Below are positions 3,729 to 47,049 of a stretch of 55,211 nucleotides of DNA, in pieces; position 1 is the stretch's first letter; every line of letters begins with the position of its first letter. The notes beneath the pieces are model-generated. The model ran no database searches, was not told the DNA's origin, and was given only the letters and a program-made list of their open reading frames with translations. The position numbers and the translations under genes were made by a program. Origin of the DNA: Girardia tigrina (taxonomy: Eukaryota); contig MQRK01188983.1 of NCBI GenBank assembly GCA_001938485.1, positions 1 through 55,211 of the forward strand, read 5' to 3'.

Positions 3729-4190
3729 CACAGCTGCCCGATGGATGCCTGTCATAGACAGTATGCAGAAGTGAAGGAATTGAACAGGCATCTCAGAAGA
3801 GATCACGATGGAGCAGGCTCAATCCCGCAAAAACAAAGAGAGAAGAAAGCCCAGCCACATCAGAAGAAAGGAAACTACCAATGCCAACATTGCCCGAAGG
3901 AATACAAAACTGCTGGATTCCTAAGGATTCACATTCAGAAGAATCACCTAGAACCACCAACATCCAACACCCAGAGAGAAGAGAACTTGGAAAGATAGAA
4001 CGAGGAAGAGTCGACATCAAACCAATCCAACTCTCAGTTACCGGACGCAACTGTGAGTATGTCGAGGATACAGCCAAATGACGATACCGAAGAAGAGCCG
4101 CACCTACAATATCGACTGCCAGCCGACTACTCGACAGCAAGAGGAGAGTTCAAGTACCCATTTCGTGGCTGTTACGCGTCCACCGTAATA
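3729..4190 (+). pseudogene. Multi-C2H2 zinc-finger fragment, probably N-terminus of an R2/NeSL-type non-LTR retrotransposon
   Basis: HSCPMDACHRQYAEVKELNRHLRRDH and YQCQHCPKEYKTAGFLRIHIQKNH, then a stop/frameshift and a degenerate third finger GEFKYPFRGC. No RT follows. Confidence 0.55.
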
Positions 4191-15706: not shown

Positions 15707-16197
15707 TATGAAATACTTTCGAATGGTGTTTATTGAATTTTGTGTTTGGAATGTTGTTTTAGGATTGTGTTTCTCCGACCCAGATGGAAGATTGATATTT
15801 TGAGTGTTTTGGACAGTCGGACTATTTTCGGAAAATTATAAAATATAAATCACATCTTTAAAATTAAATTAATCCATTTTAATCAATAAATAAATAAAAC
15901 TATTTTAAACAAATATTTTAAATTTATTTGAAAGTGATTTTAAATATTGAATTTATCTATTTTATTCAAATGCATTTAAAATGAATTAAAATATTTTTGA
16001 AAATAATTTTAAATTATTTAAATAAGGAATTGTAATTTTAATTTGTTCGAATTATAAGATTTTTAGAAATAAAATTTAAAAATTTTATCAATCAAGAACG
16101 ATATCTAAATACGAAAGTTTTGTGGAGAATTGTCCTGAAGGAAATTCGAGTTGTGATGTCGATAAAATTATTGGTTATTATATTAGTGTACTTGGTA
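15707..16197 (+). mobile_element. Diverged copy of the TG..TA dispersed family
   Basis: Contains GGATTGTGTTTCTCCGACCCAGATGGAAGATTGA and the block encoding YESFVENCPEGNSSCDVDK. Ends degenerate; no clear TSD. Confidence 0.7.
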
Positions 16198-22400: not shown

Positions 22401-24486
22401 CCAAAATTTGTGCTTTTGTAATCAAACATCTAAATATAGAAAAAACAAATAAAATTTCAAACATACTGTTTTTAACATAACTCATGAGTGATAAATAGTC
22501 AGTCACTATTGAAAAAGACAACCTAAAAGACCAGACTTTCACTACCACAATATATAAAAAGGTATAAATTTTAACATAATACACGATTATTTCCTTAATT
22601 TACAATCTTATTATCTGACGTATCATGGAACTCGTAGGAGGGGATATAAAAGTCAATATCGATAATTAATAAGTAATTTTAATTATCATTTTGAAATGAT
22701 AAAACCTGTTTTATAAACTAAAAATGATTAAAATGTAAACAATGATTTTTGAAGGTAATATTACCATATTTGAAGGTAAAGAATGAGTCGTCTGCTCATT
22801 ATTATATTTTAACACCAGGATAACTAATAATACAACTTAATAAGACAAGGTAAATAATTTACTGATTTATAGTATTAAAATTTTCAAATTGTAGTCTTAA
22901 TAGAGTAAAAATGCGGTTGGGAAAATATTTAATTGAAAAATTCGTTAGAAGTTTAAGAGATTATTTATCAAGATCAATAGAAATTAAAGAAAAAAATAAT
23001 AAAGTTCATAAATTTTCGGTTCCACTTTGATATTAATAAAGCTAAAAAATAAGTTTCTCAAATTAAAATATGAAAATGTTAAAAAAAAGTTGTTTTAATT
23101 ATCCTCAAAACAGGCAGATTTTTAAATTAACTAGAATATAAATTGTATTATGTTCTCAAATATATTATTGGTGTTTCAATGGAGTTATTTTCACAATTGG
23201 GTGCGTTACATACTTCAGTAACTAGCAGTTTTTGTATTTTGGGATAAAAGAACACACATATTCTATATACAACGTTTTAAGCAAATAAACTCTTCAACTG
23301 AATCATTGTTTTCAATTTACTTTTCAACTCTAACAGTCTTTTCTGGACCTTTGCCGTGGGTGCACCTAATTATGCACAAGCCTTACACATTGCTCTCTAT
23401 TTGCTGCAGGTCTTCTTAAACATTTCCTGTTTTATCCGCTTCATTCATTAAAGTCAATAAATTATTTCTCGTTTAAGATTTATTTTCTTTCTTGAAATCT
23501 CTATTTTTGACTAATCTATTTTTATTTAATATTAGATGACTCCATTCAGATCTGGCTTATTGGATGACCTCTAAATTCTTAGAAATAAAGATATTAGACC
23601 TGTTCTTTACATTGAAATTCTGATAAATAATTTAAAGCATATGATCAACAATACACTGAGATAACCTCTTTGATCCATCATTCCCCTCCTTGAATGATCA
23701 AATTGAACATTATTCCCACATGTTAAAGTTTAAGTTGATAAAAACCATTTATGTTACTTTATGTAATTTGATAATTTATTTTCATGTCAATTGACACAAA
23801 GTAATATAAAAAAATAAAGTTAATTAAAAAATCAATTTCTACTTTATGTTTAACTAATATAGTAAAGTAAATATTTATATTTTATTTTTTTATAATTTTG
23901 AAACAATTAGCGTTAATTTATTAATTTATAATTAAATACTAATTAATTAACTAATTTCTAATAATAATAATTTATTAGTTATTGATGAAATTAATTAATT
24001 TAATTAATCTTTCTGAATTTTATTTAAAATTTGTTAAGTATTAAAAATGAAATTAAAATTTTTAATATGTAAAATTAATTTTTTAATAAGATAAAATAAT
24101 AGTCTAAAAGTAAAAAGGTTTCATATCAATTTAAAAAGAAAATTAAGTTAAATAAATATAGAAAAGTTATTTTTTATGTATATAAATTTTTATTTTGTAT
24201 TTGTTTTTGTAATCTAATTCAAATGTTTCTTCCCGAAATTTAAAAAGAAATTACAAAACAGAAATTTATTTTAGTAATTTGTATTTGTGATATCAATATA
24301 TAATGTTCTTGAAAATGAAATTCGTTTTGATATAATTGAAAATTGTAATTCTTCAATGCAGAAATATAATAACAAGTTTTAATGTGGAATTTCAGCTCGA
24401 TCGAGTCATAAAAGTGGTTTAATTTAAGTAATGTAATATAATAATTTATATTCAAGTTAATTTAAAAATCTATCTGTTTTGCGAAT

Positions 24487-24897
24487 TGTGAGGAATGTTT
24501 TGAATTGTGTGTAGATATTGTGCATGTTGTATGTTGATTCGGATTGTGTCTCTCCTACACAGAGGGATGATTGGTATTTTCTTTGATTCTTACTAATTAA
24601 AAATAATTTAATTTTAAAGTAAAAAGATTTAAAATAATTTTTGAATGTATTATTTATTTTTTAATGTAATTTAAAATTTTAATATATTAATTTAATGTTC
24701 TTTTTTTTTAAAAAAATGTTTAGATTTAATTTCAACCAATTAGATTCTTTATAATTAATAATTTTTATTAACAGATTTTCATTTATTGAAAATAATTAGT
24801 ATGAACTCAGAAATATATCGATCAAGATAAATGTCAAATAGTGAATGCGCTTGTGATGTTAATAAATGTTGTAAAACTCATATTGATGTTGTTAATT
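24487..24897 (+). mobile_element. Copy of the TG..TA dispersed family
   Basis: Starts TGTGAGGAATG, ends GATGTTGTTAAT; closely similar to the reverse complement of 42969-43408. TSD not preserved. Confidence 0.8.
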
Positions 24898-26272
24898 AAA
24901 ACAACTTCTTTAAACATTTTCATATTTTATTTTGAGAAACTTATTTTTTAGCTCTATTAATATCAAAGTGGAACTTTATTAATTTTTTTCTTTAATTTCT
25001 ATTCATTTTGATAAATAATCTCTTAAACTTCTAACTAATTTTTCAATCAAATATTTTCCCAGTCGCGTTTTCCTCTTTTAACACTACAAAATTGATAAAT
25101 AAAAACAAACTCTAAATAATATTTATTAAAAACAAAATATGCTTTTCAATTTAATCAAAAGTTTTATTTCTTCCCACACAAATCCACTAAGTGTTATTAC
25201 TTCCTCGTCGGGGGTCAAAAGAGTCCTCTATTAATGATTCGAAAAATATAAATTGATAAAATAAAAACAATCTCATACCGAAAACCCGTTAATTTCTTTG
25301 ATCTTTTTTCTCTAAAACCGAGATTATTTTTGGAATTTATTTCAGGATTTTTTCCGCAAATATTTTTGTTTTATTGTCCCGACATTTACTGTTCGTTCAT
25401 TAATTAAAACTAATCAATTTTGAATTGTTTTTATCATCATTGAAAATGGAATTTCCATTGAGAATCTGTCAAGAAATAATAGGATAATATTTTTTATTCT
25501 TTCTTTATTTTCCGGTAAAATTGGTGATTGAAAAATTCCCAATTTTCCGAAATTCTATTTTTTTCAATTTATTTTTATTATTATTTATTTTTTTTCTGAC
25601 CCCCTCAAAAGAAAACATTGTCCAAAGCTTTTATTAGTTTTAGTAAAATAAAGAAAACTCTTTGAAAAAAATATTTCATTAAATTTTCATGAAGTTAACT
25701 GGAATGATTCCTGTTAGCAGTGACAGTTGTTAATTGGTAGGAGGGTGACTTCAAAGAGAAGGGAGGGGGCAAAAGAATGAATTAAAACAAACAACATTTG
25801 ATATATGGAAAAACAGAAAAAATTATTAATAATTGTTAATGGGAAATCAGTGATGTGAAAATTATATTACCCCGATGGGGATCAATTAATGAGTTCATGT
25901 CAAATTTAATCAGTAGTTCTCAATTTATTATTACTGATAACTGTGAGCAACAATTCCACCCGCAGTCAAAAAAATTAAAATATTAATAAAATTTATTATT
26001 ATTATTATTATCTGTTTATATAATCAACTATTATAATAACAAACCGTTATTAAATTTATTTTTGATAAATAATTTCATGTACTTTTATGCACCCTTGTCA
26101 GGTTATGAATGACCCGTTATTGGTTTTAGTCATCAAAATAAAGGTATATTATGATGATAATTCGTGGTTATAAAATATATTAAATAATGTTAATTTGTAA
26201 ATAGATTAACAAAACGAGTATGTAAATCAATGAGTATCTGACTTGACAAGAAGAAAAATAAGTTTAATAATA

Positions 26273-27110: not shown

Positions 27111-27839
27111 CATTAACTGCACTATATATTTTATGCAGAAAGTGAAATTTGAAGAAAGATCGTGTTTTCAAAAATTCCATATGTTGACGAATGGTGAGAT
27201 CATTAGGGGAAAAAAGAAATATGTGATTTTAATAGACCGAACGAAATCCATTCAATTTTTTTGATGTTTTAACTTGCTATGGCACTATATAGGTAAACTT
27301 CGTTTGAAAAATCATTTGTTTTATTGGTTTGAAATTTTTTAATTTAAAATTTATAAAATAAATTTTAAAAATAGATGAAAAATCGAAAAGTTTTGAAAAA
27401 TTTTAAAGAATCTCGTAAATTTTAGAAAGAATTGAAAAATTCCAGTAAATTTTGGAAAAAATTAAAAATCTAATAAAATTTTTAGATTTATTATTAGATT
27501 TTTCATTTATTTTAGAAATTTTAAATTGTATTAAAATATAAGTTTAAAAAAAAATAATACTGGGACTTACCAATTGACTGAGATTTAATTATCTGCAACT
27601 TAAAATAATGACAAAAATTTTAATTTATGACAACTTAATTTTCTGTGACTTAATTGTCGTGTCCTTTTAAAAACGATGTCGGAACATAAACCGAGAAGTA
27701 CTGATGATTTATTGAAAAAACATATCCCGATCTCATTAATTTTCTAATGTTTTTTTTTTAAATTAATTCCATCCTGACTACAAAGCTTTCAAATTTCCAT
27801 TCCTATCGCTAATGATTAAATAATCTTAAATAATAGTAA

Positions 27840-27918
27840 ATAAAGATATTAATCGTCCATCTGGGTCGGGGAGACACTACTCAAAAACAACATACCTCAT
27901 TCAAACACTAAATACACA
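27840..27918 (-). mobile_element. Partial copy of the TG..TA family
   Basis: CCATCTGGGTCGGGGAGACAC core motif followed by the CAACATAC/CAAACAC tract. Confidence 0.65.
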
Positions 27919-27925
27919 ATATTAA

Positions 27926-28280
27926 AGAACAGACGTCCTTTTGCATTTATTAATAAATAGTAATTATTATGTTTTTTCTTTATATTTTTATTGAATTTTT
28001 AATTTTTTTCTTTTAGTTGTTTTTGTGGCATTCCAAACAATTCAAGCGTATTTCGATGATCAATTGTATTCCCGGTAAAGATAATTTAATTTACGTTTAA
28101 TCGATCATTTTTAATGAAATGACATCTAAAATATATTTTTTTTAATATTTATTTTATTATTTTAGAGACGCCGATAACGGTTTTCGGTAATTTTATATCT
28201 ATTTACGTATTAAGAGAAGTATGATTGTTCATAAGAGGTTTCGTTAATTAATTATTTTATATTTATATTTTTTAGTATGG
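27926..28280 (+). CDS. Candidate micro-exon gene (or pseudogene) for a small secreted peptide; no start codon found
   Basis: Exons ..27959, 28017-28074 and 28166-28186 (21 nt), possibly 28217-28237 (21 nt, weak GAG acceptor), splice to RTDVLLHLLINIVFVAFQTIQA-YFDDQLYSRDADNGFR(SMIVHK). Confidence 0.4.
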
Positions 28281-29161: not shown

Positions 29162-30713
29162 CCGTGTTTCCCCGAACGTAAGACAGTGTCTTACTTTCTT
29201 TTTATCCCTAAAAACTCCACTATGTCTTACTTTCGGGGTATGTCTTATATTGGGAAAAAATTGTCGAATTTTTTTGTTTTAACCATAAAATTAACATTTA
29301 TTAACAACCTGAATAGTATTGTATTCACCACAAAACAGGTTAATAAAAGGAAGTGCCCAGAATGTCTTGTTACAACATTGCATAACATNNNNNNNNNNNN
29401 NNNNNNNNNNNNNNNNNNNNNNNNNNNNNNNNNNNNNNTGCATAACATGTAAAACAATGAAAAATGGTAAGAACGAACAGTGGAATATTGGAAGATAAAA
29501 CAGATTTATTCCATGACAACCATGTCATCATTCTCTGGGATATCATCATAAACATCCACACACTTAGGTTCCTGTGGATTTTCTTGGGACTCTCGGGACG
29601 ACATTTCTTGCCGAATCATTGCCCCATATTTCTCCTGGGTAGCAACGGCACTGTCCTGAAATGAGCAGGCTTTGTCCAGGTAGCCAGCTCGCAGTGCATT
29701 TGCAACGCAGGTGTTAGTGATCTTATTCCAAGAATTCTTTACCCAGTTAACAATNNNNNNNNNNNNNNNNNNNNNNNNNNNNNNNNNNNNNNNNNNNNNN
29801 NNNNTTTTTTGTTTTAACCATAAAATTAACATTTATTAACAACCTGAATAGTATTGTATTCACCACAAAACAGGTTAATAAAAGGAAGTGCCCAGAATGT
29901 CTTGTTACAACATTGCATAACATGTAAAACAATGAAAAATGGTAAGAACGAACAGTGGAATATTGGAAGATAAAACAGATTTATTCCATGACAACCATGT
30001 CATCATTCTCTGGGATATCATCATAAANNNNNNNNNNNNNNNNNNNNNNNNNNNNNNNNNNNNNNNNNNNNNNNNNNNNNNNNNNNNNNNNNNNNNNNNN
30101 NNNNNNNNNNNNNNNNNNNNNNNNNCTGTCCTGAAATGAGCAGGCTTTGTCCAGGTAGCCAGCTCGCAGTGCATTTGCAACGCAGGTGTTAGTGATCTTA
30201 TTCCAAGAATTCTTTACCCAGTTAACAATCTCTGGCAGTCTGGGCTTCATAAAGTTCCCACGTATATTTCTCTCCATTCGGTTTTCAATGTAGTCATTGA
30301 TTTCCACACTTGTAGTCCTCCTTGTAGTCTTCCTCAGCTGCATCTTGCAGTTATAATAAGAGTTGCAGAGAATCTCTTCACACCCTACCCTCCCCCTCCT
30401 TGGTCTCTCTCTGTATGACCAGCACTGACCTTTTTCCGGGAGGACACAGAGCCAGTGACACCTGTCGGCAGACTGATCAAAACGGCGCTGTCTTTTCAGT
30501 CGATGGGAGGGCACTGGCCTGGCACCCCTCCAGGGTGCGGCCCGCACCCCCAGCCCCACTCTTTGTACCGCACGTCACTGGAGGAAAATCCCCCGTGTTT
30601 CCCGAAAGTAAGACATATGTCTTACTTTCGGGGTACGGCTTATATTAGCTGACCCTTCTGAAACTCCCGATACGTCTTACAATCGGGGGTGTCTTACTAT
30701 CGGAGAAACACGG
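29162..30713 (-). mobile_element. pogo/Tigger-like Tc1-mariner element, internally deleted
   Basis: TA|CCGTGTTTCCCCGA ... TCGGAGAAACACGG|TA with repeated GTCTTAC subterminal motifs. Minus strand encodes the pogo DDE C-terminus RGNFMKPRLPEIVNWVKNSWNKIT..VANALRAG. Confidence 0.88.
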
Positions 30714-36130: not shown

Positions 36131-36275
36131 TACATGGTGACGTCAAAAGTTCGTAGACTAACCTACTAAAAAACCCCAACGAAATCCAAAATACCTGTTT
36201 TTTTAGGGGTCACATGGAAGTTATAAGAACAAGCTACTTTTCCACGCAGTCTCCTTCATTCTCAACGCACACATA
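36131..36275 (+). mobile_element. mariner-like 5' end fragment
   Basis: TACATGGTGACGTCAAAAGTTCGTAGACT TIR-like start; abuts and truncates a TG..TA family copy. Confidence 0.4.
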
Positions 36276-36409
36276 TCACAAACAGAATTGTCATTACAAC
36301 AATTATTCAAACCACTTTCACTATTCGACATTTTTCTGTATTATATTTCGGATTTTCTACCTAATTTTTTTAAAATAAATGAAAATTTTTTAATATTATT
36401 TATTAATTA

Positions 36410-36918
36410 GGGGTCGTTCATAAACTACGTCACGCGATTTTTTCCGTTTTCATATCCCGCCCCCCCCATCGTCACAACTCGTCACAAAATATTATACACC
36501 ATATAAAACTTCGTCACATATTTCGGAGTCCTTCCTCTTTTTAAATAAAAAAAAATACTTAAACAAAAACATTTCAAATTAATTCAGGTAAACAAAAATA
36601 TATATTAATTCATTTAAAACAAAGGAAAAAAACAAAACCATACTGGGACATTAAACATAGTAAAAAATATAATAAACATTATTGATCTTCCTAATTAAAC
36701 ATTATTCCCTGGCTGTGTTATGATATCTCAAAACAAAATTTTTCACTATCAATTTATTAATTTTATTGTAAGTGCATCAGGAGACGATTTTTTGATATTT
36801 TATGATTTTTTGAATGTGACGTCACATTTCAGAATACCCCCCTTCCCTATCATCACACATCGTCACAGCCAAATGAACCCCCCCCCGTTAGTGCGTGACG
36901 TAGTTTATGAACGAACCC
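36410..36918. mobile_element. PIF/Harbinger-type MITE
   Basis: TTA|GGGGTCGTTCATAAACTACGTCACGC ... GCGTGACGTAGTTTATGAACGAACCC|TTA. The empty site with a single TTA is visible in the paralog near 43135-43150. Confidence 0.9.
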
Positions 36919-37238
36919 TTATAAAGATTCTAATTGGTTAACAGTAAATCTAAACATTTTTAAAAAGTATTAATTAATCTAATATATTAAAATTATTAAT
37001 TACATTAAAAATTAAATATTACATTCGAAAATTTAAATATGACAGTTGTGATTATTAATTTGTTTAAGTATTTTAAAAAGATTGTAAATATTAAATAAAT
37101 TTTACTTGTTGATATTATGAATTCTGAAGTGAAACCTGGAGATTTAACTGGACACCACGCTGGTGTTCCAATAAAAGTTTTGAGGATTCCTAAACTAGAA
37201 CTGCAATCAATCTTTAAGGAAACCCTCAAGAAGAAAAT

Positions 37239-38761
37239 GAAGGAGTACAATGGAGTGGATTCTGAAGAAGGTCAAATATGGTGTAGAGACATATGTCAAT
37301 GCTCAGAATTTTTGGGTTAACATTAACGGAAATGTGTAACTATTTGTTGATAGGCGAAGCGAAAATTCTTTGGGGGAATGAAACAGAAGAGGATAAGAAA
37401 CCAATGTCAGATGTGGAATCCAAAAATTGATTCTAGAAAACATTTATGAAGAAAGTACCGCTGTTGGAAGAATTGGAAAAACTAAGCCAAATTTGTCAAG
37501 GTGAGTATTAAGAACACCAATTTGACTTTTTATATTTTTATTTAAACAACAATTTTGATTGTCCTTATGACAATCTTTGTCAAAACTTTCGTACATTTGC
37601 ATTCTAAACGAAAATGATTAATGAATTAATTCTCATTATTTTTCAGCAAATGGGGAAATAATTATTTTATTAAAATATTTACTCAAAACATATTGGATAA
37701 TAATTAAAATGATTATTTATTATTTAAAAAATATTAATTTGATTTATTTATTAAATATTATAAAAATTAATTAACTTATTCAAAATTTTAAAATTATTTG
37801 AAATTAAAAATAAATTTAAACATTACATATTTTTAGATAATAAGAATTAAAATATTAATCATCCATCTGGGTATGAGAGACACAATCCCAAATCAACATA
37901 CACATTCAAACACAAAACATCAAACATTCAAATATTCCTCACAGTGAGAATGAAAGATTCTTAACATTCAAATTAAGGGTTCGGAAAACAATTGAAAATT
38001 TTAGGAAACACAGCGATGAAGAAATTTTGAATGAGCTTTTGAAAAAGCGGATAAAATCTCATGTTCTGAAGAATTGATTTGTTTTCAAACCTAACATCTC
38101 GGTGGACGAAATGAGAGCGGAAGCTAAGATTTATGAGGACAACATATCAAAAGAAGAAAGAAATGATGTTTTAGCCGTCAAAACATCGTATGCAGAAATG
38201 GCAAAGAAAGACAAACATCAAGTTAGAAGATATGAGAATCCTGAACATAGAAGAAATACAGCTCGAATAAATGAAACAAACGATAGGCAACCAATATTAA
38301 GAACGAAACGTACAATACCATCGGAAAGATTTAATAAAAGTACTGAGAGAGGATCCAGTAGAATGTCAGAAGATAAACAACAATATAATCGCCCGGTGCA
38401 TTCGGCTTGGTACGAAGCAAAGAAGTTATATTGCAAAATAAAGAGAATAAAATTAAGAATAAAATAAAAGAATAAAAATCCGACTCCAGAAGAGGAGCAT
38501 TTAACCAGAGGGGATTGTTATTGTTGTGGAAAACATGTGCATTTGAAGAAGGATTGTCCTTTAAATAATAGATGTTTAATCTGTGGAAAAAGTGGACACG
38601 GGTTCAGAAACTGTAATCATATTAGGAATGTTAATATAGTATACATCAAAGATGTGTACAATGAACAAAACGTGGATATCGTATCATATAAAGATGAATA
38701 TGAAGATGATTTGAATGCCAGAGACTCCATGGTGAGCATTTCGTCTGTGGAATCGGCATAA
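37239..38761 (+). pseudogene. gag: Gypsy gag with two CCHC zinc knuckles
   Basis: CYCCGKHVHLKKDC and CLICGKSGHGFRNC; stops and frameshifts; interrupted by the insertion at 37506-37943. Confidence 0.85.
37506..37943 (-). mobile_element. TG..TA family copy inserted in Gypsy gag
   Basis: GTGAG|TATTAAGAAC ... ATTCCTCACA|GTGAG perfect 5-bp TSD; 438 bp. Confidence 0.92.
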
Positions 38762-38854
38762 AATATACAACAAATCGAATTGCAGAGATAGTAGAGTAGT
38801 CAGATTGTAAATGGTGGAGCGATGTTAAGCTGAACAATCACAATGAACAATCCA

Positions 38855-41143
38855 GAACTTTTTCCAGTATAGATTTAGGCAAAGCATACCATCAAGTGGC
38901 ATTGGATGAAAGTTCTCAAAAAAAAACTGCATTTTGCACAAGAACACAGCAGTATTGTTTTAACCGTGTACCGTTTGGACTTTCAACAGCACCCGGAACG
39001 TTTTAGAGAATAATGAATTCATTATTTGAAGATTTACTGTTCTCTGAAGTAGTATGATACCTAGATAATGTCTTATTTTACTCAAAATCAATGAAGGATC
39101 ATATGAGACGATTAGAAGAAGTACTGAATAGACTGATGAAAGCAGGTTTAAAAGTCAATCCAGGGAAATGCAAATTCGGAGTGGAGGAGCTGATATTTCT
39201 GGGACATACAATTAACAAAGAAGGTATCTCAACAAATAAATTGAAAGTGGCAGAAATTCAAAATTTTCCGATTCCAAAGTGTACTCGAAATTTACGAGCA
39301 TTTTTAGGTCTGTGTAACTACTATCGACGTTTTATCAAGAATTACGCTGAATTAGCAGCACCTTTGCACATTGCATGTAGCGGAAAATGTAAAGAAATAT
39401 TTTAGTCAGACGAGTGCGACAGAAGTTTTAACGAATGGAAGCAAAAGCTATGTGGTGCACCAATATTAGCATTTGTGAACCTGAATAATAATTTCATCTT
39501 AGATACCGATGCATTATTCGGATCGATAGGAGCAGTTCTTAGTCAGATATCAGAAGAGAAAGAAGTATTAATCGCGTATTCATCGAGGACTTTAACCACA
39601 CATGAAAAATGGTACTGTGGGACAAGAAAGGAACTATTAGCTATACAATTAGCTATACAAGTTCATGTTACATTTCAAGCAATATTTATATGGTAAGCGA
39701 TTTACAGCAAGAACTGATCATAAAACCCTGATGTATATGAAGAGTACTTCCAAACCAATAACTCCTCGATTCCAGACATGGTTAGTAAACATGGTGGATT
39801 TTTACTTTGATTTGAAGTATAGAAAAGGTGACGAACATGGAAATGCAGATGGATTATCACTGCTATATGACGATGCCTATATACAATGGGAAACAAAACC
39901 CGAAGAACCAAAATCAACAAAAGCAAGGGCGAAACACATCAATACAGTGGTGATTCAGTATATAATTCAATGGATAAAAGACGAACAAGAAAGTGCTCAG
40001 AGTTGAACCAGTTGAAACAAATACCAGAGATGGTAGAGGGGTAAAAGAATGAAATCACCAAGAACTTATTACAACTAAACGACCAATTAGTTTATCAGAA
40101 TGAGTTATTGGGTAGGCAAGAAGGAAATTGTGTGTTACTGTTGGTTCCGAAGCAAATTAGAAAAGATTTCATCAGGAAAATACACAGAGATTTATGTCAT
40201 GTAGGTATCAAAAAGACAAAGAAGTATATCGAAAATCATTTTATGCTACCAGATTTAGCGAAAGAGGTGCAAATCGTTATAGCAGATTGTCAAGAATGTA
40301 TACTCAGAAAAATTCTAAGTGAAAAAAAACAAAATAGAAGTTAATTCCAATAAGAAGTGACGAGTTTTTAGAGCAAGTCGTGATGGATATCGCATATGTG
40401 GGTGACAAGAATAGCATGTACCCATATCTATTGGTCATGGTGGACCAGTTTTCGAAATTGGTCTCTTTGACAGAGATTAGAACTCAAAACGAAGACACCA
40501 TAGTTCAATGCGTGTTGATAAAATAGATATATAGATATGGGAAGCCAAAAACAATATTAACAGACAATGGAAAATGTTTTACTGGCAGAAAATATAAAGA
40601 TTTTTGCAGGAAATATGGAATCGAACAAAGATTTAGTAGCCCATTTCAGCATCAATCAAATGGGTTGGCAGAAAGAACTATTCGAACAGTGAGAGACATG
40701 ATGGTAAAAAGAAGAGGAGACACTGGTAAACGATCATGATAGCAAATTGTTCCGAAGATAGAATTCTGTCTAAATGCAACAGTTCAGAGTACAACCGGAT
40801 ATTCGCCCTTCGGAGTTGTGTTTGGTAGAAAAATAAACGTACGTGCGGCAGCAGGAATAGTTAAAACGGAAGAGAGTAACGTGATCAAGATGAAGGTAAG
40901 AGAAAATTTTGAGAAAGCGGCAAGACGAATGGAAAATTGAGAGAGAGAGAAGAAAGAAAATCGACATTTCGAGGATGGTCAGAAAGTCTTTGTAAAACAA
41001 GATCCTACAAAACTGAGAATGGACACTTTCCCATTCTATGGACCGTACCAAATTTTAAGACATATATCGCCACACCGATTGGAACTACAGAATCTGAAAG
41101 ACAGAAACAATTTATCGAAGAATTGAGTGGATTAAGAAAGTAA
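38855..41143 (+). pseudogene. pol: Gypsy pol (RT, RNase H, integrase); protease and RT N-terminus deleted
   Basis: IDLGKAYHQV, PFGLSTAPGTF, YLDNV, FLGLCNYYRRFI, LDTDA, RTDHK, HRDLCHVG..C..C, LTDNGKCF, SNGLAERTIR. Confidence 0.93.
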
Positions 41144-41282
41144 ATAAGAAATCATAAAAGAGGGAAAGTTTTGATCATTAATATGTTTAAGTATTCTAAA
41201 ATGATTGTAAATATTAAATAAATTCTACTTGTTGATATTATGAATTCTGAAGTGAAACCTGGAGATTTAACTATGACATTTG

Positions 41283-41763
41283 AAAAATATTTAAGTCTTT
41301 TTACTTTAAAATTAAATTATTTTCAAATTGTAGGAATAAAAGAAAATACCAATCAGCTATCTGTGTAGGAGAGACACAATCCGAATCAATATACTGTTCA
41401 TGTCAAAACAATGAACCCAGTTATGAAATTTTTTTAAAGAGAAACTATTATATAAAAAAATTAATTTGATAATTGTGAAAATTTAAAAAAAAACTGTAAT
41501 TTTTCGAATTAAGAAATATGTAATTGAATTTTGAATGGGATTGTATGAAAATTAGTGTGAATTAAAAAAAATTGATTATTTCTAAATTAGAAATAATCAA
41601 TTTTTTAATTCACACTAATTTTCATACAATCCCAATCGTTTTGACATGAATAGTATATTGATTCGGATTGTCTCTCCTATACAGAAAGCTGATTGGTATT
41701 TTCTTTTATTCCTACAATTTGAAAATAATTTAATTTTAAAGTAAAAAGACTTAAAATATTTTT
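41283..41763. repeat. Fold-back structure: outer inverted duplication plus inner near-perfect palindrome
   Basis: About 41283-41412 is the reverse complement of about 41637-41763; 41536-41634 is a hairpin with arms of about 47 bp and a 3-nt loop. Confidence 0.9.
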
Positions 41764-42189
41764 AATTACAATTAGAAATTCTAATTGTTGAAAAGGATTT
41801 TTAAAAAAAAGTTGAATTTGTTTAAAATAGCTAATTAAATCAAAATTGTGGTTAAAAGTTTTGAAAATCAATAAACGATTAATCCGAACTTCGTTATTTT
41901 TGATTCAAATTCGAAAATGATGGAAAATAATTTATTGAAAAATTTAAATTTATCGAAATTAATGAATCCAAACTTCCATATACAACATGCAAAATATAAA
42001 ACAACAAATAATTCAAAACATACCTCACACAGGTGAAGGTATTAACAGAAAATTTATTTACCGAGCAATCAAGAGATATGAGTGAACTGGTTTTATTGTC
42101 CCATCAAAAGCTGTAGAAAGTTTACTGTACAGACTCGTTGAATGCTGGGAAAGGTTATGCTTACAATAAAAAAAGAAATGATAGTGAGG

Positions 42190-42400
42190 AAAGTAAGGTA
42201 AAAATTGACTTTAAGTGAAAGTTCAGTGCACAGAATCTTAAAGTATTCCTTGCATCTAAAAGCTTACAAACTCCAGAAATTCTACACGATTCCAAATAAA
42301 AACCAAAAAGCACATAGGGAGCGTTGTTAAAAAAACGTTCGATTGTTTTTAGATCGATCATCATATTTTCTGATGAAAAGCTTTTTATGCTACAACTACA
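42190..42400 (+). pseudogene. Tc1/mariner-superfamily transposase remnant
   Basis: LSESSVHRILKYSLHLKAYKLQK and IIFSDEKLF. Confidence 0.7.
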
Positions 42401-42968
42401 TCATTTTGTTTTATGTCTTTAAAATAATTTGAGCTTGAATATTTAGCACAGTTTTATTCGTAAATTCCCATAAAATTCTAAACGAAAATAATTTTGATTA
42501 TCTCTTTAATTCAGAAATGTGTACAAGAAGTTTTGGAAAATGAACAAGAATGGAGGAATTAAAAAATGGTACCCGGTGAAGGAATATAACGGGGGCATTG
42601 TGGAAATTTAACTGCTTGTTTCATCAAATTATGATTTATTGAATAAAGTCTTCTTCTTTTCATAATTTTGGTGTAATAATTGTATATATTTTATGGTAAG
42701 ATGATAATAATTCTGTAAACTTTCAGCCATAAACTTCGCAGATTGAGGTATATCTTTCATGATAAAGATCTTTTAATGTCTACATAATAGACTTTTGATC
42801 GGAAAAAATCTTTACTATACAGGGGTATTCTGAAAAAAAATTCATTTCTAAAAAAATGATATTAAATCATTTTTGAATAAATGATTTTCTTATTTTATAA
42901 TTTTCTGAATTTAATGAAACTATTTTATGTTTGATTTCTACAATTAATAAGTATTTTTATATGTTATC

Positions 42969-43408
42969 TATTAACAACGTCAATATGATTTTTAAACATT
43001 TATTAACACCACAATCAGAATCGTTATGACAACAATTATTCAAAGGACTTTCACAATTTGACATTTTCTTGATTAATAGATTTCTGAATTCATACTAATT
43101 TTTTTCAATAAATGAAAATCTTTTAATAAAAATTATTAATTATAAAAATTCTAATTGGTTAAAATTAAATCTAAACATTTTTTAAAAAAAGTACCATTTA
43201 AATTAATATATTTTATTATAAATTACATTAAAAATTAAATATTACATTCGAAAATTATCCTAAATAATTTTACTTTAAAATTAAATTAAATTATTTTTAA
43301 TTAGTAGAAATTAAAGAAAATACCAATCAGCCATCTGCGTAGGAGAGACAATCCGAATCAACATACAACATGCACAATATCAACACACAATTCCAAACTT
43401 TCCTCACA
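42969..43408 (-). mobile_element. TG..TA family copy
   Basis: TTATC|TATTAACAAC ... TTTCCTCACA|CTATC (4/5 TSD match); 440 bp. Confidence 0.88.
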
Positions 43409-43479
43409 CTATCTATTCTTGTGTGTATTTTCATGTATGTTTTATTTAAATAATTGAGGATCATGTATATTTTTTCAAA

Positions 43480-43960
43480 TAAATGATGATATGCAATGAA
43501 ATGTAAGGTAGTGAGTTTGATAGGTTATTGCTCAATGCAGAGGGTGCTGAAAATTGGATTAGTTAAAGAAAATTGAAGCAATTATCAAGAGAGTTTACTG
43601 TAGACCTTCGGTCAATATTTCAAAAAAATGAAGAATCTGACATTCGTAAAAGATCAAGAACTGCGGCAAACGCTCATCTAATACTGGATCTTATTGAAAG
43701 AGATGCTCATTTTTCTTTTGATAAATCGAAGAAAGAACTGGAATCCCCTTGAGTTTAGTCTAATATATTCTAAACAGGTTTCTTATAAAACATAGTTTAT
43801 TCGTAGGGTTGGTCTCTCATTTACTAACAGATGAAATGAAACAAGCTGGATTTGAAAAGTCTGAAATTATACTGAGAGCGATATATAAAAGTGTCATGGT
43901 AATTGATGAAAAATGATTGTACCGGAATTATTTACTCCCTCTCAATAATCATCGGGCATA
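43480..43960 (+). pseudogene. mariner transposase remnant
   Basis: LVSHLLTDEMKQ (WVPHxLT motif) and VMVIDEK*LY (VTGDEKWIY motif). Confidence 0.65.
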
Positions 43961-45149
43961 GATGAAAGTTAGTGACATTAGTCATCGTTCATATGTTTTA
44001 AATATTATAATGAGTGGCGTTATATTTCATATTTTCTTATGGAACACAAGATTCATTCTATCCTTAAGCCTCCATACTCTCACAATACCAATCAGCTAGT
44101 ATGATTGGTTTTCCCAAACATTGACACTCTACATGCAGATGTTAAACTCAATAGAGGTTCATGAAATTCTTAATAATTTTCACTGTAGCATTCGTAGATA
44201 GTCACTGAATAAAAAACTTGAGCGTTTATGTAACGATCTACAAGAAATTAAACCACTCTATGATGAAACTATCATAATTCATAATGTCAAAGGAAAGAAG
44301 AATCTGACCTTGTAGATTATCTGTCTTCTTTTTCCTTTTAATTAAAAAACATTTTAATCTGTATAAGATAAGACAAGCTGATAGCATTTTACTTAAAGGC
44401 GTTATATGTTTCCTAATATTGCAATTCGTAACTTTTCAATTAAATTCAGTCATTTAAGAGACATGATCTTCTGATATAATCTTTGTTAAATAAGTTTATC
44501 TCTTAATAATATTTTTGATTTTTAAAGTTTTGCTTAATTTAAAAAAGCCATGTTCATTTGGATGGAAAACCCTTTTCAATAACATTTATGGAATTCGATT
44601 CCAAGTAAAATCAAAACAAACTGAAAATTCTCATAAAAATTCTCTTATAGTTTTTTAAAACAAATATTATAAATACTCCGTCTGAATTCTAATGTAAGGG
44701 TAAATAATACTATTTCTGATAACTGCTGTTGTCGAAGGTTGTTTACCTTAACTTTTAATTAGATGAATAAAAATTAGATGGTAAGTAATATCATCTTTAC
44801 TTATCCTAACAATTTCATAACAAATACTCTTTATCTAAACTGATGAAAAGGTATTATATTTAAAATGGTGATAAAAATATTTTATTTGAAAATGATTCAT
44901 AAACCACTAAAAAACTAAAAAAAGAAATACTTTGTATATAAATCAGGATTTTGTTTGAGTTTAACTGCACAATAACGAGTGCGAATGTTAAAATACTGTT
45001 GATTGCTTCATGATGGTAACTTCATACATGATTGCTTCACAAAAAGATTTCTTATTTTACAAATGGAATGAGTGATTATGAACCAATGTATAGGTCGCGA
45101 ACTATCTGTCGAAATAACACAAAGCATCCTGAACGAACTGCTGAACCAC

Positions 45150-45350
45150 GAACTGAATGTGATATTGAAGTTTCTCAAAGAACAGTCTGAGATATCATAC
45201 ACGAAGGGCTCTGTTAACCAAGGCAGAAATCAGAAATCCATACGAGCAACAGGCGGCTCTGAAGTCGAACAGAAAATCTGTTCTCATCAGAATCGTCTTG
45301 CCAACGGCCTGGTCCATCAGGAACAGAATGACGTTCATGTACTTAATAAC
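45150..45350 (+). pseudogene. Degraded retrotransposon integrase fragment
   Basis: IIHEGLC*P (HHCC region) and EQKICSHQNRLANGLV (xNGxxER region). Confidence 0.4.
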
Positions 45351-45879
45351 TATTAAGAACACCAACATGGGTTTTCAAACTTTTATTTTCATTACAATCA
45401 GAATTGTCTTTTGGACAACTCTCAGCGAAACTCTCGTCATTCGACATCGTTCTAAATTGATAATTTTTTATTAATGTTTGTTAATAAACAATTATTCGAA
45501 CAAATTTTCATTATTTTCAGATTTTATTTTTAAAGTTCAAATTTGTAGTTTTAGTATTAATTTTTATTTACATATTAATTTTATTTAAAAATTATTTTAT
45601 GTAAAGAAAGAACATTCAGTTAATTCAAAACTTAGTTAAAACTATTTATTTTATTTAAATTTTAATATGAAGATTTGAAAGGATTTACTATTTTTCATGT
45701 TTTTACATATCTTATGCTGTACTTTAAAATATAAATTATATCCGAATAATTATCTATCGTGAACATCCAAAATATCAATTTTCCATCTGGGTGGGAGAAA
45801 CACATTTCCAAATACTAAACTCAACATACAAAATTCAACAAACCAATTTCAACATACCAAATTTAAAATATTCCTCACA
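45351..45879 (-). mobile_element. TG..TA family copy
   Basis: ATAAC|TATTAAGAAC ... ATTCCTCACA|ATAAC perfect 5-bp TSD; 529 bp. Confidence 0.92.
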
Positions 45880-46628
45880 ATAACATTAACTATGATATTA
45901 TGAAGAACCCGAAAGGTACTTGAATATTTTCCCTGGTGAGATTAAAGGGCTAGGATGATTTCAGTTTGGCACGATTTGGATCTCTGATGAATATCAGCTA
46001 CGGATACTCAGTGAAGATCCAAGTAAAATAATTGGTTGCGTTAATAAATATAAATATTAAATTAAAAAAAATAAAAACCCAACATAACTTTTAAAAAGTT
46101 ATTTATGTGTACATAAATATTTATATTATATGGGTTTAGTAATCAAAATAAATGTTTCCTCCATAAATTTAAAAAATGATATTAAAAAATAAAAAAACAA
46201 AGTCAATTGTTTTAATAATTTGTGTTTATTGAATACATTTTCTTGAAAATAAAAATTCGTTTTAATATGATTGAAAATTCAAATTCGAATGATTATTCAA
46301 AGCAGAATCATACTAGCAATAATTACAATTCATAAATTTAAGAAATATTTTTGAAGGCTGCGAACTATGTTTTTGAATGTTGTATGTTATTTTAGTATCT
46401 ACTATCCAGATGAAGATGAATATTTTAAATTATTTTTATCAAAAATTACACTTATAAAGACTGTTTTTGTCATACAAACTTTGTTTATGTTAGTGTACCC
46501 ACAGTAAAAATATATCATAATTTTGTTTCAATAACATGATGTTTTGTGGACAGCTACATATTCATTTCGGATCTCATACACATGTTTTTATTTGATTACT
46601 TTAATGAAGTCGACTGTATAACTATTAT

Positions 46629-47049
46629 TATTAAGAACATTAATTGAGTTTCATTGAGTTTTCATTACATTTATTTGCATCACAATTTTAATTGCCACTA
46701 GAACAATTCTCCGTAAAGCTTGCGTAACTCGTCATCGTTCTTGAATGATAATTTTTTAATAATATTCTTTAACGACTTATTATTCGAACAAATTTAAATT
46801 ACCATTTAATTATTACAAAAATAATTTATACTTTAAATTAAAATAAATTTTATTTATTTTAAGAAAATTATTATTAAAATATTATTTATGAAAAATTTAT
46901 TTCATTTTAAAATTGGTTATTTGAATTTTAATAATTGATTAAATAATCCGACGTTTTAAAATATTTAAAATATCAATCTTCCATGTGGTTGGGAGAAACA
47001 CGATCCTAAAACAACATACAACAAGCACCATTCAAAAATATTCCTCACA
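46629..47049 (-). mobile_element. TG..TA family copy
   Basis: ATTAT|TATTAAGAAC ... ATTCCTCACA|ATTAC (4/5 TSD match); 421 bp. Confidence 0.9.

What the first reader, a model, noticed from the sequence alone, without database searches (positions are those of the whole stretch)
37506..47049. The family's two end blocks vary like coding sequence, in permuted (C-terminus first, N-terminus last) order
Seen: near the 3' (TA) end an ATG-initiated frame runs off the terminus: MSNDESFAESCPKDNSDCNENKSLKTHVGVLN (45351), MQMYESFDKDCHKDNQNCCLNKNIKSQIGVLN (37506), ISKYESFVENCPEGNSSCDVDK (16090), MTSYASFTENCSSGN*NCDANK (46629), MSNCESPLNNCCHNDSDCGVNKC (42969). C-x6-C spacing is retained, with synonymous swaps (TCG/TCT/TCA, GAA/GAG, AGT/AGC, TTT/TTC, CCT/CCA, GGA/GGC). 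Near the 5' (TG) end a second block reads DCVSPTQM(E/D)D* with third-position variation (GTT/GTC, CCG/CCC/CCT, ACC/ACA/ACG) and a TGA/TAA stop in five copies. Its frame relative to the terminus is not constant. Inference: either an LTR overlapped by coding sequence at both ends (gag starting in U5, last ORF ending in U3), or a mini-gene completed only on circularisation or tandem joining, or a mobile promoter-plus-ATG cassette that reads into flanking DNA.
Basis: partly seen in the sequence, partly recalled or inferred. Interest (0 to 1): 0.85.

Follow-up and report, generated by a model that had tools for sequence, protein, structure and literature searches.

The report
Solo LTR family with conserved ends
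The repeats are single long terminal repeats left behind by an old retrotransposon, and their two conserved ends behave like control sequences rather than the halves of a split gene, so the finding is largely ordinary.

Summary
The sequence features are real. At least eight copies of a 410-530 bp repeat lie in the window. They end 5'-TGTGAGG...CTTAATA-3' and have 5-bp target-site duplications: perfect at two copies, 4/5 at two. All are solitary, which fits solo LTRs of an old family with about three subfamilies.

The coding reading does not hold.
- **3' block:** differences are flat across codon positions (16/16/15 variable columns). pN/pS is 0.68, no better than column shuffles (p=0.20). Only one of four length changes is a multiple of three.
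- **Motifs behind the peptide:** the conserved 'NK' is an AATAAA hexamer 31 nt from the end. The 'C-x6-C' region sits on a palindrome, ATTGTC-N5-GACAAT.
- **5' block:** it shows a nominal third-position bias over 11 codons. But the frame is closed upstream in 4 of 5 complete copies, and two instances carry 2-nt deletions inside it.
- **End-to-end joining:** the frame leaving the TA end meets TGA at bases 3-5 of the TG end.
- **Database search:** a profile search of 1.84 billion proteins found only three short ORFs with unrelated tails.

One point stays open. The ATG-led frame is open in 6 of 7 copies and keeps its phase in all three subfamilies, so a Ty1-like gag start inside the LTR remains possible (about 0.25).

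The parts
37506..37943 (-). Copy c37: complete solo LTR (438 bp), its own subfamily. It lies inside the gag region of an unrelated Ty3/gypsy element. Target duplication GTGAG at 37501-37505 and 37944-37948.
42969..43408 (-). Copy c42: complete solo LTR (440 bp), subfamily A. Target duplication matches 4/5.
45351..45879 (-). Copy c45: complete solo LTR (529 bp), subfamily B. Perfect 5-bp target duplication (ATAAC on the + strand).
46629..47049 (-). Copy c46: complete solo LTR (421 bp), subfamily B. Target duplication matches 4/5. Its end ORF is broken by stops and a 10-nt insertion.
24487..24897 (+). Copy c24: solo LTR, subfamily A, 85% identical to c42. It carries a 30-nt deletion in the 3' block. 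No clear target duplication.
15707..16197 (+). Copy c16: solo LTR, subfamily B. Both termini are degraded and it has ATA in place of ATG.
36224..42029 (-). Copy c36: subfamily-A LTR split into pieces (about 36224-36409, 36919-37043, 41273-41394, 41965-42029). The splits are nested insertions: a MITE-like element, the Ty3/gypsy element, and an inverted-duplication insert. The pieces were compared apart.
27702..27935 (-). Copy c27: partial copy holding only the half next to the TG end, including the 5' block.
37507..37602 (-). 3' block frame in c37: ATG plus 31 codons running to the TA terminus. Homologous frames are at 45352-45447(-), 42969-43064(-), 36224-36331(-), 46629-46735(-), 24831-24897(+) and 16101-16197(+).
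37537..37542 (-). AATAAA hexamer (the 'NK' of the peptides), a likely polyadenylation signal. It is exact in 5 of 7 copies. It lies 61 nt after the ATG in the four of these that lack the 30-nt deletion (31 nt in c24), and 30-31 nt before the TA end in four of the five (41 nt in c46).
37557..37575 (-). Palindrome/hairpin ATTGTC-N5-GACAAT underlying the 'C...DN' part of the peptide. It is kept in all 6 copies that have this stretch.
37852..37882 (-). Core of the 5' block in c37. The same core is at 15768-15798(+), 24547-24577(+), 27846-27876(-), 41346-41376(-), 41669-41699(+), 43320-43350(-), 45772-45802(-) and 46970-47000(-).
37044..41272 (+). Neighbour, not part of the family: a decayed Ty3/gypsy element. 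It has 106-bp LTRs (37044-37149 and 41167-41272, 94% identical, AGTT...AACT) and the target duplication ATGAC. It sits inside c36 and hosts c37.

Best explanation
The repeats are solo long terminal repeats of an old, abundant LTR-retrotransposon family with about three subfamilies: c37; A = c42, c24, c36; B = c45, c46, c16.

Each copy is what remains after an element inserted, making a 5-bp target duplication, and later lost its interior by LTR-LTR recombination. That origin is inferred.

The two conserved ends are the working parts of an LTR, kept at the nucleotide level.
- The TG end carries the integrase attachment site and a roughly 45-nt U3 motif of unknown partner.
- The TA end is the R/U5 part. 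It holds a small palindrome or hairpin, an AATAAA signal about 31 nt before the end, and the other attachment site.
- The AT-rich centre drifts freely.

The peptide-like look of the blocks comes from these fixed motifs read in one frame. It does not come from selection on a protein. The anatomy, the target duplications and the substitution statistics are shown. The roles assigned to the motifs are inferred.
For: - Terminal anatomy and target duplications.
- At least 8 solitary copies at 60-85% identity, none paired around an interior.
- Conservation is highest in the 5' block (0.62-0.77), about 0.5-0.6 in the 3' block and lowest in the AT-rich centre.
- The 3' block has no 3-base periodicity in any phase or strand (16/16/15; 144/146/141). 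pN/pS is 0.68, shuffle p=0.20. The flat pattern holds over 32 codons in the copies without length changes, with nt identity 60-67% and aa identity 38-50%.
- ATG-to-terminus lengths are 97, 97, 97, 67, 96, 107 and 108 nt. Only one of four length changes is a multiple of three.
- AATAAA sits at a fixed place in 5 of 7 copies.
- The palindrome is paired in 41 of 42 cells with 2 double changes.
- The 5' block frame is closed before the terminus in 4 of 5 complete copies, and 2 instances have 2-nt deletions inside it.
- No long protein among 1.84 billion representatives carries the peptide. The three hits are 42-82 aa with unrelated tails.
Against: - The ATG-led frame has the fewest stops of the six frames: none inside the LTR in 6 of 7 copies, against 7-41 summed over the copies in the other frames. 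A composition shuffle gives an open frame only 3-9% of the time.
- ATG is kept in 6 of 7 copies.
- The 97-nt length and phase are kept in all three subfamilies, while the rest of the LTR is full of length changes.
- The 5' block has a nominal third-position bias (p about 0.01-0.09).
- The 3' end is TA, not the canonical CA.
- No full-length element was seen, so the LTR assignment rests on anatomy alone.
- The sample is 7-9 copies of 11-32 codons, so power is low.
Confidence: 0.6

Rival explanations
1. Same solo LTRs, but the ATG in the 3' block is the true start of the element's first ORF (gag). That ORF would begin in R/U5 and read through the LTR end and the primer-binding site into the interior, as in yeast Ty1. 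Solo copies then show only the first 32 codons running into unrelated flank. The 5' block stays non-coding.
For: - The frame is open to the terminus in 6 of 7 copies. ATG is present in 6 of 7, plus all three metagenome ORFs.
- The phase at the terminus is kept in c37, c45, c16 and c24, i.e. in every subfamily.
- Precedent: in Ty1 the PBS lies inside the GAG ORF (PMC4974528).
- The unrelated gypsy element in this window also has its first ATG inside its own LTR.
Against: - Codon-position differences are flat and pN/pS is not below the shuffle expectation.
- Length changes are frame-random.
- No protein of any length with this N-terminus and a gag or pol body was found among 1.84 billion representatives. 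The source genome seems barely represented there, so this is a weak negative.
- The conserved residues coincide with nucleotide motifs: AATAAA and the palindrome.
Confidence: 0.25
2. Both ends are coding in the parent element: gag starts in the 3' block, and the last ORF (pol or an extra gene) ends in the 5' block inside U3.
For: The 5' block shows a third-position bias (3/6/9; 30/52/114) and has a stop codon at the same place in five instances.
Against: - In the block's own frame, a stop lies between the TG terminus and the block in 4 of 5 complete copies. It lies 0-9 codons upstream in 8 of 9 instances.
- The distance to the terminus falls in all three phases.
- There are 2-nt deletions inside the block in c42 and in the inverted c36 piece.
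- Subfamily A lacks the stop.
Confidence: 0.04
3. A permuted mini-gene: the ORF leaving the TA end is completed by the 5' block when two ends are joined, either in a circle junction or in tandem LTRs.
For: Only the order of the two blocks. In one copy (c42) another phase happens to stay open as far as the block.
Against: - The ORF leaves the TA end with one base over.
- Read in that phase, the TG end gives TGA at bases 3-5 in all five copies tested (0 codons read).
- For c37 the other two phases stop after 7 and 4 codons, long before the block at 56 nt.
Confidence: 0.02
4. A mobile promoter-plus-ATG cassette kept because it reads out into flanking DNA and makes fusion products.
For: The frame is open to the very end. 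The three metagenome ORFs and the window copies each run on into different flanks.
Against: - The run-on is what any outward-open frame in a solo LTR would give.
- The tails are short (2-29 further codons in the window) and unrelated.
- There is no sign of selection on the peptide.
Confidence: 0.04
5. Not an LTR at all, but a short non-autonomous element of another class moved by a DDE enzyme that makes 5-bp duplications.
For: - No full-length parent was seen.
- The 3' end is TA, not CA.
- Every copy is solitary.
Against: - There are no terminal inverted repeats beyond an imperfect 9-10 nt (6 of 10 match).
- The element is asymmetric, with an AATAAA near one end only.
- Its size and AT-rich centre are typical of LTRs.
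Confidence: 0.05

Closest known systems
Solo LTRs of LTR retrotransposons (Ty1/copia, Ty3/gypsy, BEL/Pao)
   Same: - A few hundred bp long with a 5-bp target duplication.
- TG at the 5' end and a short imperfect inverted repeat at the tips.
- Conserved ends around a fast-drifting AT-rich centre.
- Many solitary copies of several diverged subfamilies, some nested in other elements.
   Different: The 3' end is TA rather than CA. No interior, PBS or polypurine tract was available, so the superfamily cannot be named.
[quoted passage not shown]
   Same: An ATG-led frame starts about 97 nt before the LTR's 3' end and is open to the end. The phase is kept across subfamilies.
   Different: There is no codon-type substitution pattern and no continuation into a gag body. 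There is no sequence similarity; the resemblance is in layout only.
Ty3 bipartite primer-binding site, with segments in the 3' UTR/U3 (PMC4974528)
   Same: It shows that a short, strongly conserved U3 segment can be a cis-acting RNA element rather than coding sequence.
   Different: Pairing of the 5' block with a tRNA could not be tested: the window holds no tRNA gene. The alignment fold gave no supported structure.
The Ty3/gypsy element in the same window (37044-41272)
   Same: It is an LTR element whose first ATG also lies inside its short LTR.
   Different: - It is unrelated in sequence and its LTRs are 106 bp with AGTT...AACT tips.
- It lies on the other strand.
- It is inserted into c36 and hosts c37, so it is a neighbour and not the parent.

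Membership tests
LTR retrotransposon (solo LTR) | Target-site duplication of 4-6 bp flanking the repeat | tested here: met
   5 bp. Perfect at c37 and c45, 4/5 at c42 and c46, unclear at c24, c16 and c36.
LTR retrotransposon (solo LTR) | Termini 5'-TG...CA-3' with short inverted repeats | tested here: inconclusive
   TG at the 5' end in the 6 termini that are intact. The 3' end is TA. The tips match 6 of 10 as an inverted repeat.
LTR retrotransposon (solo LTR) | Two copies in direct orientation flanking an interior with PBS, polypurine tract and gag-pol | tested here: not met
   No such pair exists in the window. Same-strand neighbours have their own target duplications or belong to different subfamilies.
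LTR retrotransposon (solo LTR) | U3-R-U5 signals in one orientation (promoter, polyadenylation signal) | tested here: inconclusive
   AATAAA sits at a fixed place 30-31 nt before the TA end in 5 of 7 copies. Promoter elements cannot be told apart from the AT-rich background. No expression data.
Ty1-like 'gag starts inside the LTR' | ATG in R/U5 with the frame open to the LTR end | tested here: met
   ATG in 6 of 7 copies. No stop inside the LTR in 6 of 7.
Ty1-like 'gag starts inside the LTR' | Coding-type evolution (third-position excess, dN/dS<1, in-frame indels) | tested here: not met
   16/16/15 variable columns. pN/pS 0.68, shuffle p=0.20. One of four length changes in frame.
Ty1-like 'gag starts inside the LTR' | Frame continues into a shared gag body beyond the LTR | tested here: inconclusive
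   No long protein with this N-terminus among 1.84 billion representatives. The three short hits have different tails. The genome's own full-length copies could not be searched.
ORF ending in U3 (last gene overlapping the 3' LTR) | Frame open from the LTR's 5' terminus to the stop | tested here: not met
   Closed in 4 of 5 complete copies. The phase relative to the terminus varies.
Gene completed across an end-to-end junction | Open frame across the TA-to-TG junction in the ORF's phase | tested here: not met
   TGA at bases 3-5 of the TG end lies in the phase in which the ORF leaves the TA end, in 5 of 5 copies.

The most novel reading that the evidence does not exclude
The 32-codon ATG frame at the TA end is kept open by selection in all three subfamilies as an LTR-borne start cassette. 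In solo copies it would add a short Cys-containing leader to whatever lies downstream. At an LTR-LTR junction it would close after one further codon into a defined 33-residue micro-peptide. The evidence does not exclude this. It rests only on the frame's openness and phase retention, and it goes against the flat codon-position pattern.
Probability: 0.04. Interest if true: 0.5.

Novelty: new member of a known kind. Interest (0 to 1): 0.15.

Why it matters
As it stands it matters little. It adds one more diverged solo-LTR family to a repeat-rich, AT-rich eukaryotic region.

It also shows how fixed nucleotide motifs (a polyadenylation hexamer, a palindrome, attachment sites) can look like a conserved peptide when read in one frame.

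If the ATG proved to be the gag start, the family would be another Ty1-style layout. The LTR ends would then be useful for dating subfamilies. That would be a modest annotation result and not a new mechanism.

Tried and rejected
- **The Ty3/gypsy element as parent.** Rejected. It has its own 106-bp LTRs and target duplication, lies inside c36 and is itself interrupted by c37.
- **Same-strand pairs as one element (c37/c42, c45/c46, c16/c24).** Rejected on separate target duplications and subfamily mismatch.
- **Metagenome scan with the 5'-block pattern.** Five hits, all chance: only the pattern itself matches, there is no 3' block, and GC is 39-47%.
- **Viral-contig scan with the c37 tail.** Nothing.
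- **The search for homologous proteins with P0001.** It found only itself.
- **Rfam on the whole window.** No family.
- **tRNA scan.** None, so tRNA pairing of the 5' block could not be tested.
- **RNA folding of the 3' block.** z-scores run from -2.3 to +0.3, with no consistent fold beyond the 7-bp hairpin. The 5' block gave no supported structure.
- **Shared continuation beyond the TA end.** P0001 and P0003 resemble each other weakly for about 8 residues, and c37 and c16 match 3 of 14. I judged this not significant in AT-rich translation.
- **Host organism.** Not identified.

- I once read one copy's TA end on into its own TG end in my head. Nothing of this was saved, printed or used. The report gives only phases and counts.

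Full report
**Setting.** The window is AT-rich (about 20-37% GC in 2-kb steps). It is full of decayed mobile elements and has several N-masked stretches. I left the masked stretches untouched.

**The family.** Self-comparison and profile scans find six essentially complete copies, one copy split by nested insertions, and one half copy.

| Copy | Coordinates | Strand | Note |
|---|---|---|---|
| c37 | 37506-37943 | - | own subfamily |
| c42 | 42969-43408 | - | subfamily A |
| c45 | 45351-45879 | - | subfamily B |
| c46 | 46629-47049 | - | subfamily B |
| c24 | 24487-24897 | + | subfamily A |
| c16 | about 15707-16197 | + | subfamily B |
| c36 | 36224-42029 | - | subfamily A, split by nested insertions |
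| c27 | 27702-27935 | - | half copy |

- The 5-bp flanks repeat perfectly at c37 and c45 and 4/5 at c42 and c46.
- The tips form only an imperfect inverted repeat, matching 6 of 10.
- Identity between copies is 60-85%. They fall into about three subfamilies: c37; A = c42, c24, c36; B = c45, c46, c16.
- A 31-nt degenerate pattern from the 5' block hits 9 times against 0 expected.
- Conservation peaks in the 5' block (0.62-0.77), is moderate in the 3' block (0.5-0.6), and falls in the AT-rich centre.

This is the anatomy of solo LTRs (general knowledge of LTR elements: 4-6 bp duplications, TG start, short inverted tips). Two reservations apply: the 3' end is TA rather than CA, and no interior was seen.

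**Not the neighbour's LTR.**
- Between c37 and c42 lies a decayed Ty3/gypsy element on the + strand. Pfam finds RVT_1, RT_RNaseH, Integrase_H2C2 and rve in its pieces.
- It has its own 106-bp LTRs, 94% identical with AGTT...AACT tips, and the target duplication ATGAC.
- It is inserted into c36, and c37 is inserted into it. It is therefore a neighbour and not the parent.
- Its gag-pol frame is in at least nine pieces. That means at least eight stops or frameshifts, one nested insertion, and an apparent deletion of the protease and most of the RT.

**3' block: is it coding?** The quoted peptides are there.
- Over the 22 codons from ATG to AATAAA in seven copies, variable columns by codon position are 16/16/15 and pairwise differences 144/146/141.
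- pN/pS is 0.68, against 0.90 and 0.71 in the other frames. 20% of column shuffles do as well.
- Because the counts are flat modulo 3, no frame on either strand shows coding periodicity.
- Over all 32 codons, the three copies without length changes differ by 10/10/12, 13/12/13 and 12/9/14. Nucleotide identity is 60-67% and amino-acid identity only 38-50%.
- ATG-to-terminus lengths are 97, 97, 97, 67, 96, 107 and 108 nt. Only one of four length changes is a multiple of three.

**Nucleotide motifs behind the 'peptide'.**
- The 'NK' is an exact AATAAA in 5 of 7 copies. It lies 61 nt after the ATG (31 nt in c24, which has the 30-nt deletion) and 30-31 nt before the TA end (41 nt in c46).
- The 'C...DN' stretch is a palindrome, ATTGTC-N5-GACAAT. 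It is paired in 41 of 42 cells with two double changes, and 29 of 500 shuffles do as well.
- The second Cys codon lies in a further ATTGT.
- Whole-block RNA folds are not consistently better than shuffles, with z from -2.3 to +0.3.

**What still speaks for an ORF.**
- The ATG frame has no stop inside the LTR in 6 of 7 copies. The other five frames total 7-41 stops, and composition shuffles are open only 3-9% of the time.
- ATG is kept in 6 of 7 copies.
- The 97-nt spacing and phase are kept in every subfamily.
- Since the copies share ancestry this amounts to perhaps two or three independent trials. I rate it as suggestive.
- It fits a Ty1-like layout in which gag starts inside the LTR. In Ty1 the PBS lies within the GAG ORF (PMC4974528).

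**Longer ORFs.**
- A profile of the seven peptides was searched against 1.84 billion representative proteins. It gave three hits of 82, 61 and 42 aa, and each matches over residues 1-30 or 1-32.
- They are single JGI metagenome ORFs of the c37 type, and their tails differ from one another and from the window's flanks.
- P0001 has no other relatives.
- So there is no gag-sized protein with this N-terminus. The source genome is barely represented, so this is a weak negative.

**5' block.**
- The 33-nt core shows 3/6/9 variable columns and 30/52/114 differences by phase (p=0.089 and p=0.008). That is a nominal third-position bias over 11 codons chosen after the fact.
- In that frame a stop lies 0-9 codons upstream in 8 of 9 instances. 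The frame is closed between the TG terminus and the block in 4 of 5 complete copies.
- The block's distance from the terminus covers all three phases.
- Two instances carry 2-nt deletions inside it, and subfamily A has TGG where the others have the stop.
- It cannot be the end of an ORF that enters the LTR.

**End-to-end joining.** The 3' frame leaves the TA end with one base over. Read in that phase, the TG end gives TGA at bases 3-5 in all five copies, so no codon is read. A permuted mini-gene is therefore contradicted.

**Conclusion.** This is a family of solo LTRs whose ends are conserved as cis-acting sequence (confidence 0.6). A Ty1-like gag start in the 3' block is the live alternative (0.25). 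The other readings are unlikely.

**Limits.**
- The sample is 7-9 copies.
- The one metagenome scan gave only chance hits.
- The host was not identified.

Noticed in passing
window 37044-41272 (+): A decayed Ty3/gypsy element with very short LTRs (106 bp, AGTT...AACT) and the target duplication ATGAC. Its first ATG (37117) lies inside its own 5' LTR and the frame runs past the LTR end. This is a real local example of an ORF that starts in an LTR.
   Followed up: partly
window 36410-36918: A 509-bp MITE-like insert in c36 with terminal inverted repeats of about 30 bp (91% match). It is flanked by TTA/TA, which suggests a PIF/Harbinger- or Tc1-type target.
   Followed up: partly
window 41283-41763: A large imperfect palindrome (74% over about 480 nt, with an inner arm pair 41533-41637 at 93%). 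It includes an inverted duplicate of the c36 5' block. Its origin is unexplained.
   Followed up: no
window 22908-23101 and 24893-25071: Inverted repeats of about 180 bp at 92-94% bracket a unit of about 2.1 kb that contains c24. c24 may sit just inside another TIR-bounded element, which could explain its missing target duplication.
   Followed up: no
window 29270-30229: Three pairs of 100%-identical direct repeats spaced 475-535 bp apart, interleaved with N-masked patches. They overlap a minus-strand ORF whose C-terminus looks like a pogo/Tigger-type transposase by eye. This was not tested.
   Followed up: no
window 24123-24351 and 46054-46286: Another repeat (72% over about 240 nt) lies next to c24 and between c45 and c46, in an orientation that does not fit an interior of the LTR family.
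   Followed up: no
window 3729-3995 (+): An open frame with a C2H2 zinc finger (Pfam PF00096, E=4.6e-07) in a GC-richer patch. It could be a host gene or an element remnant; this is undecided.
   Followed up: no
proteins P0001 and P0003 (JGI metagenome ORFs): Beyond the LTR terminus their tails share about 5 of 10 residues at the same offset. The two copies may sit in paralogous sites of a larger repeated unit. Their DNA could not be fetched.
   Followed up: partly
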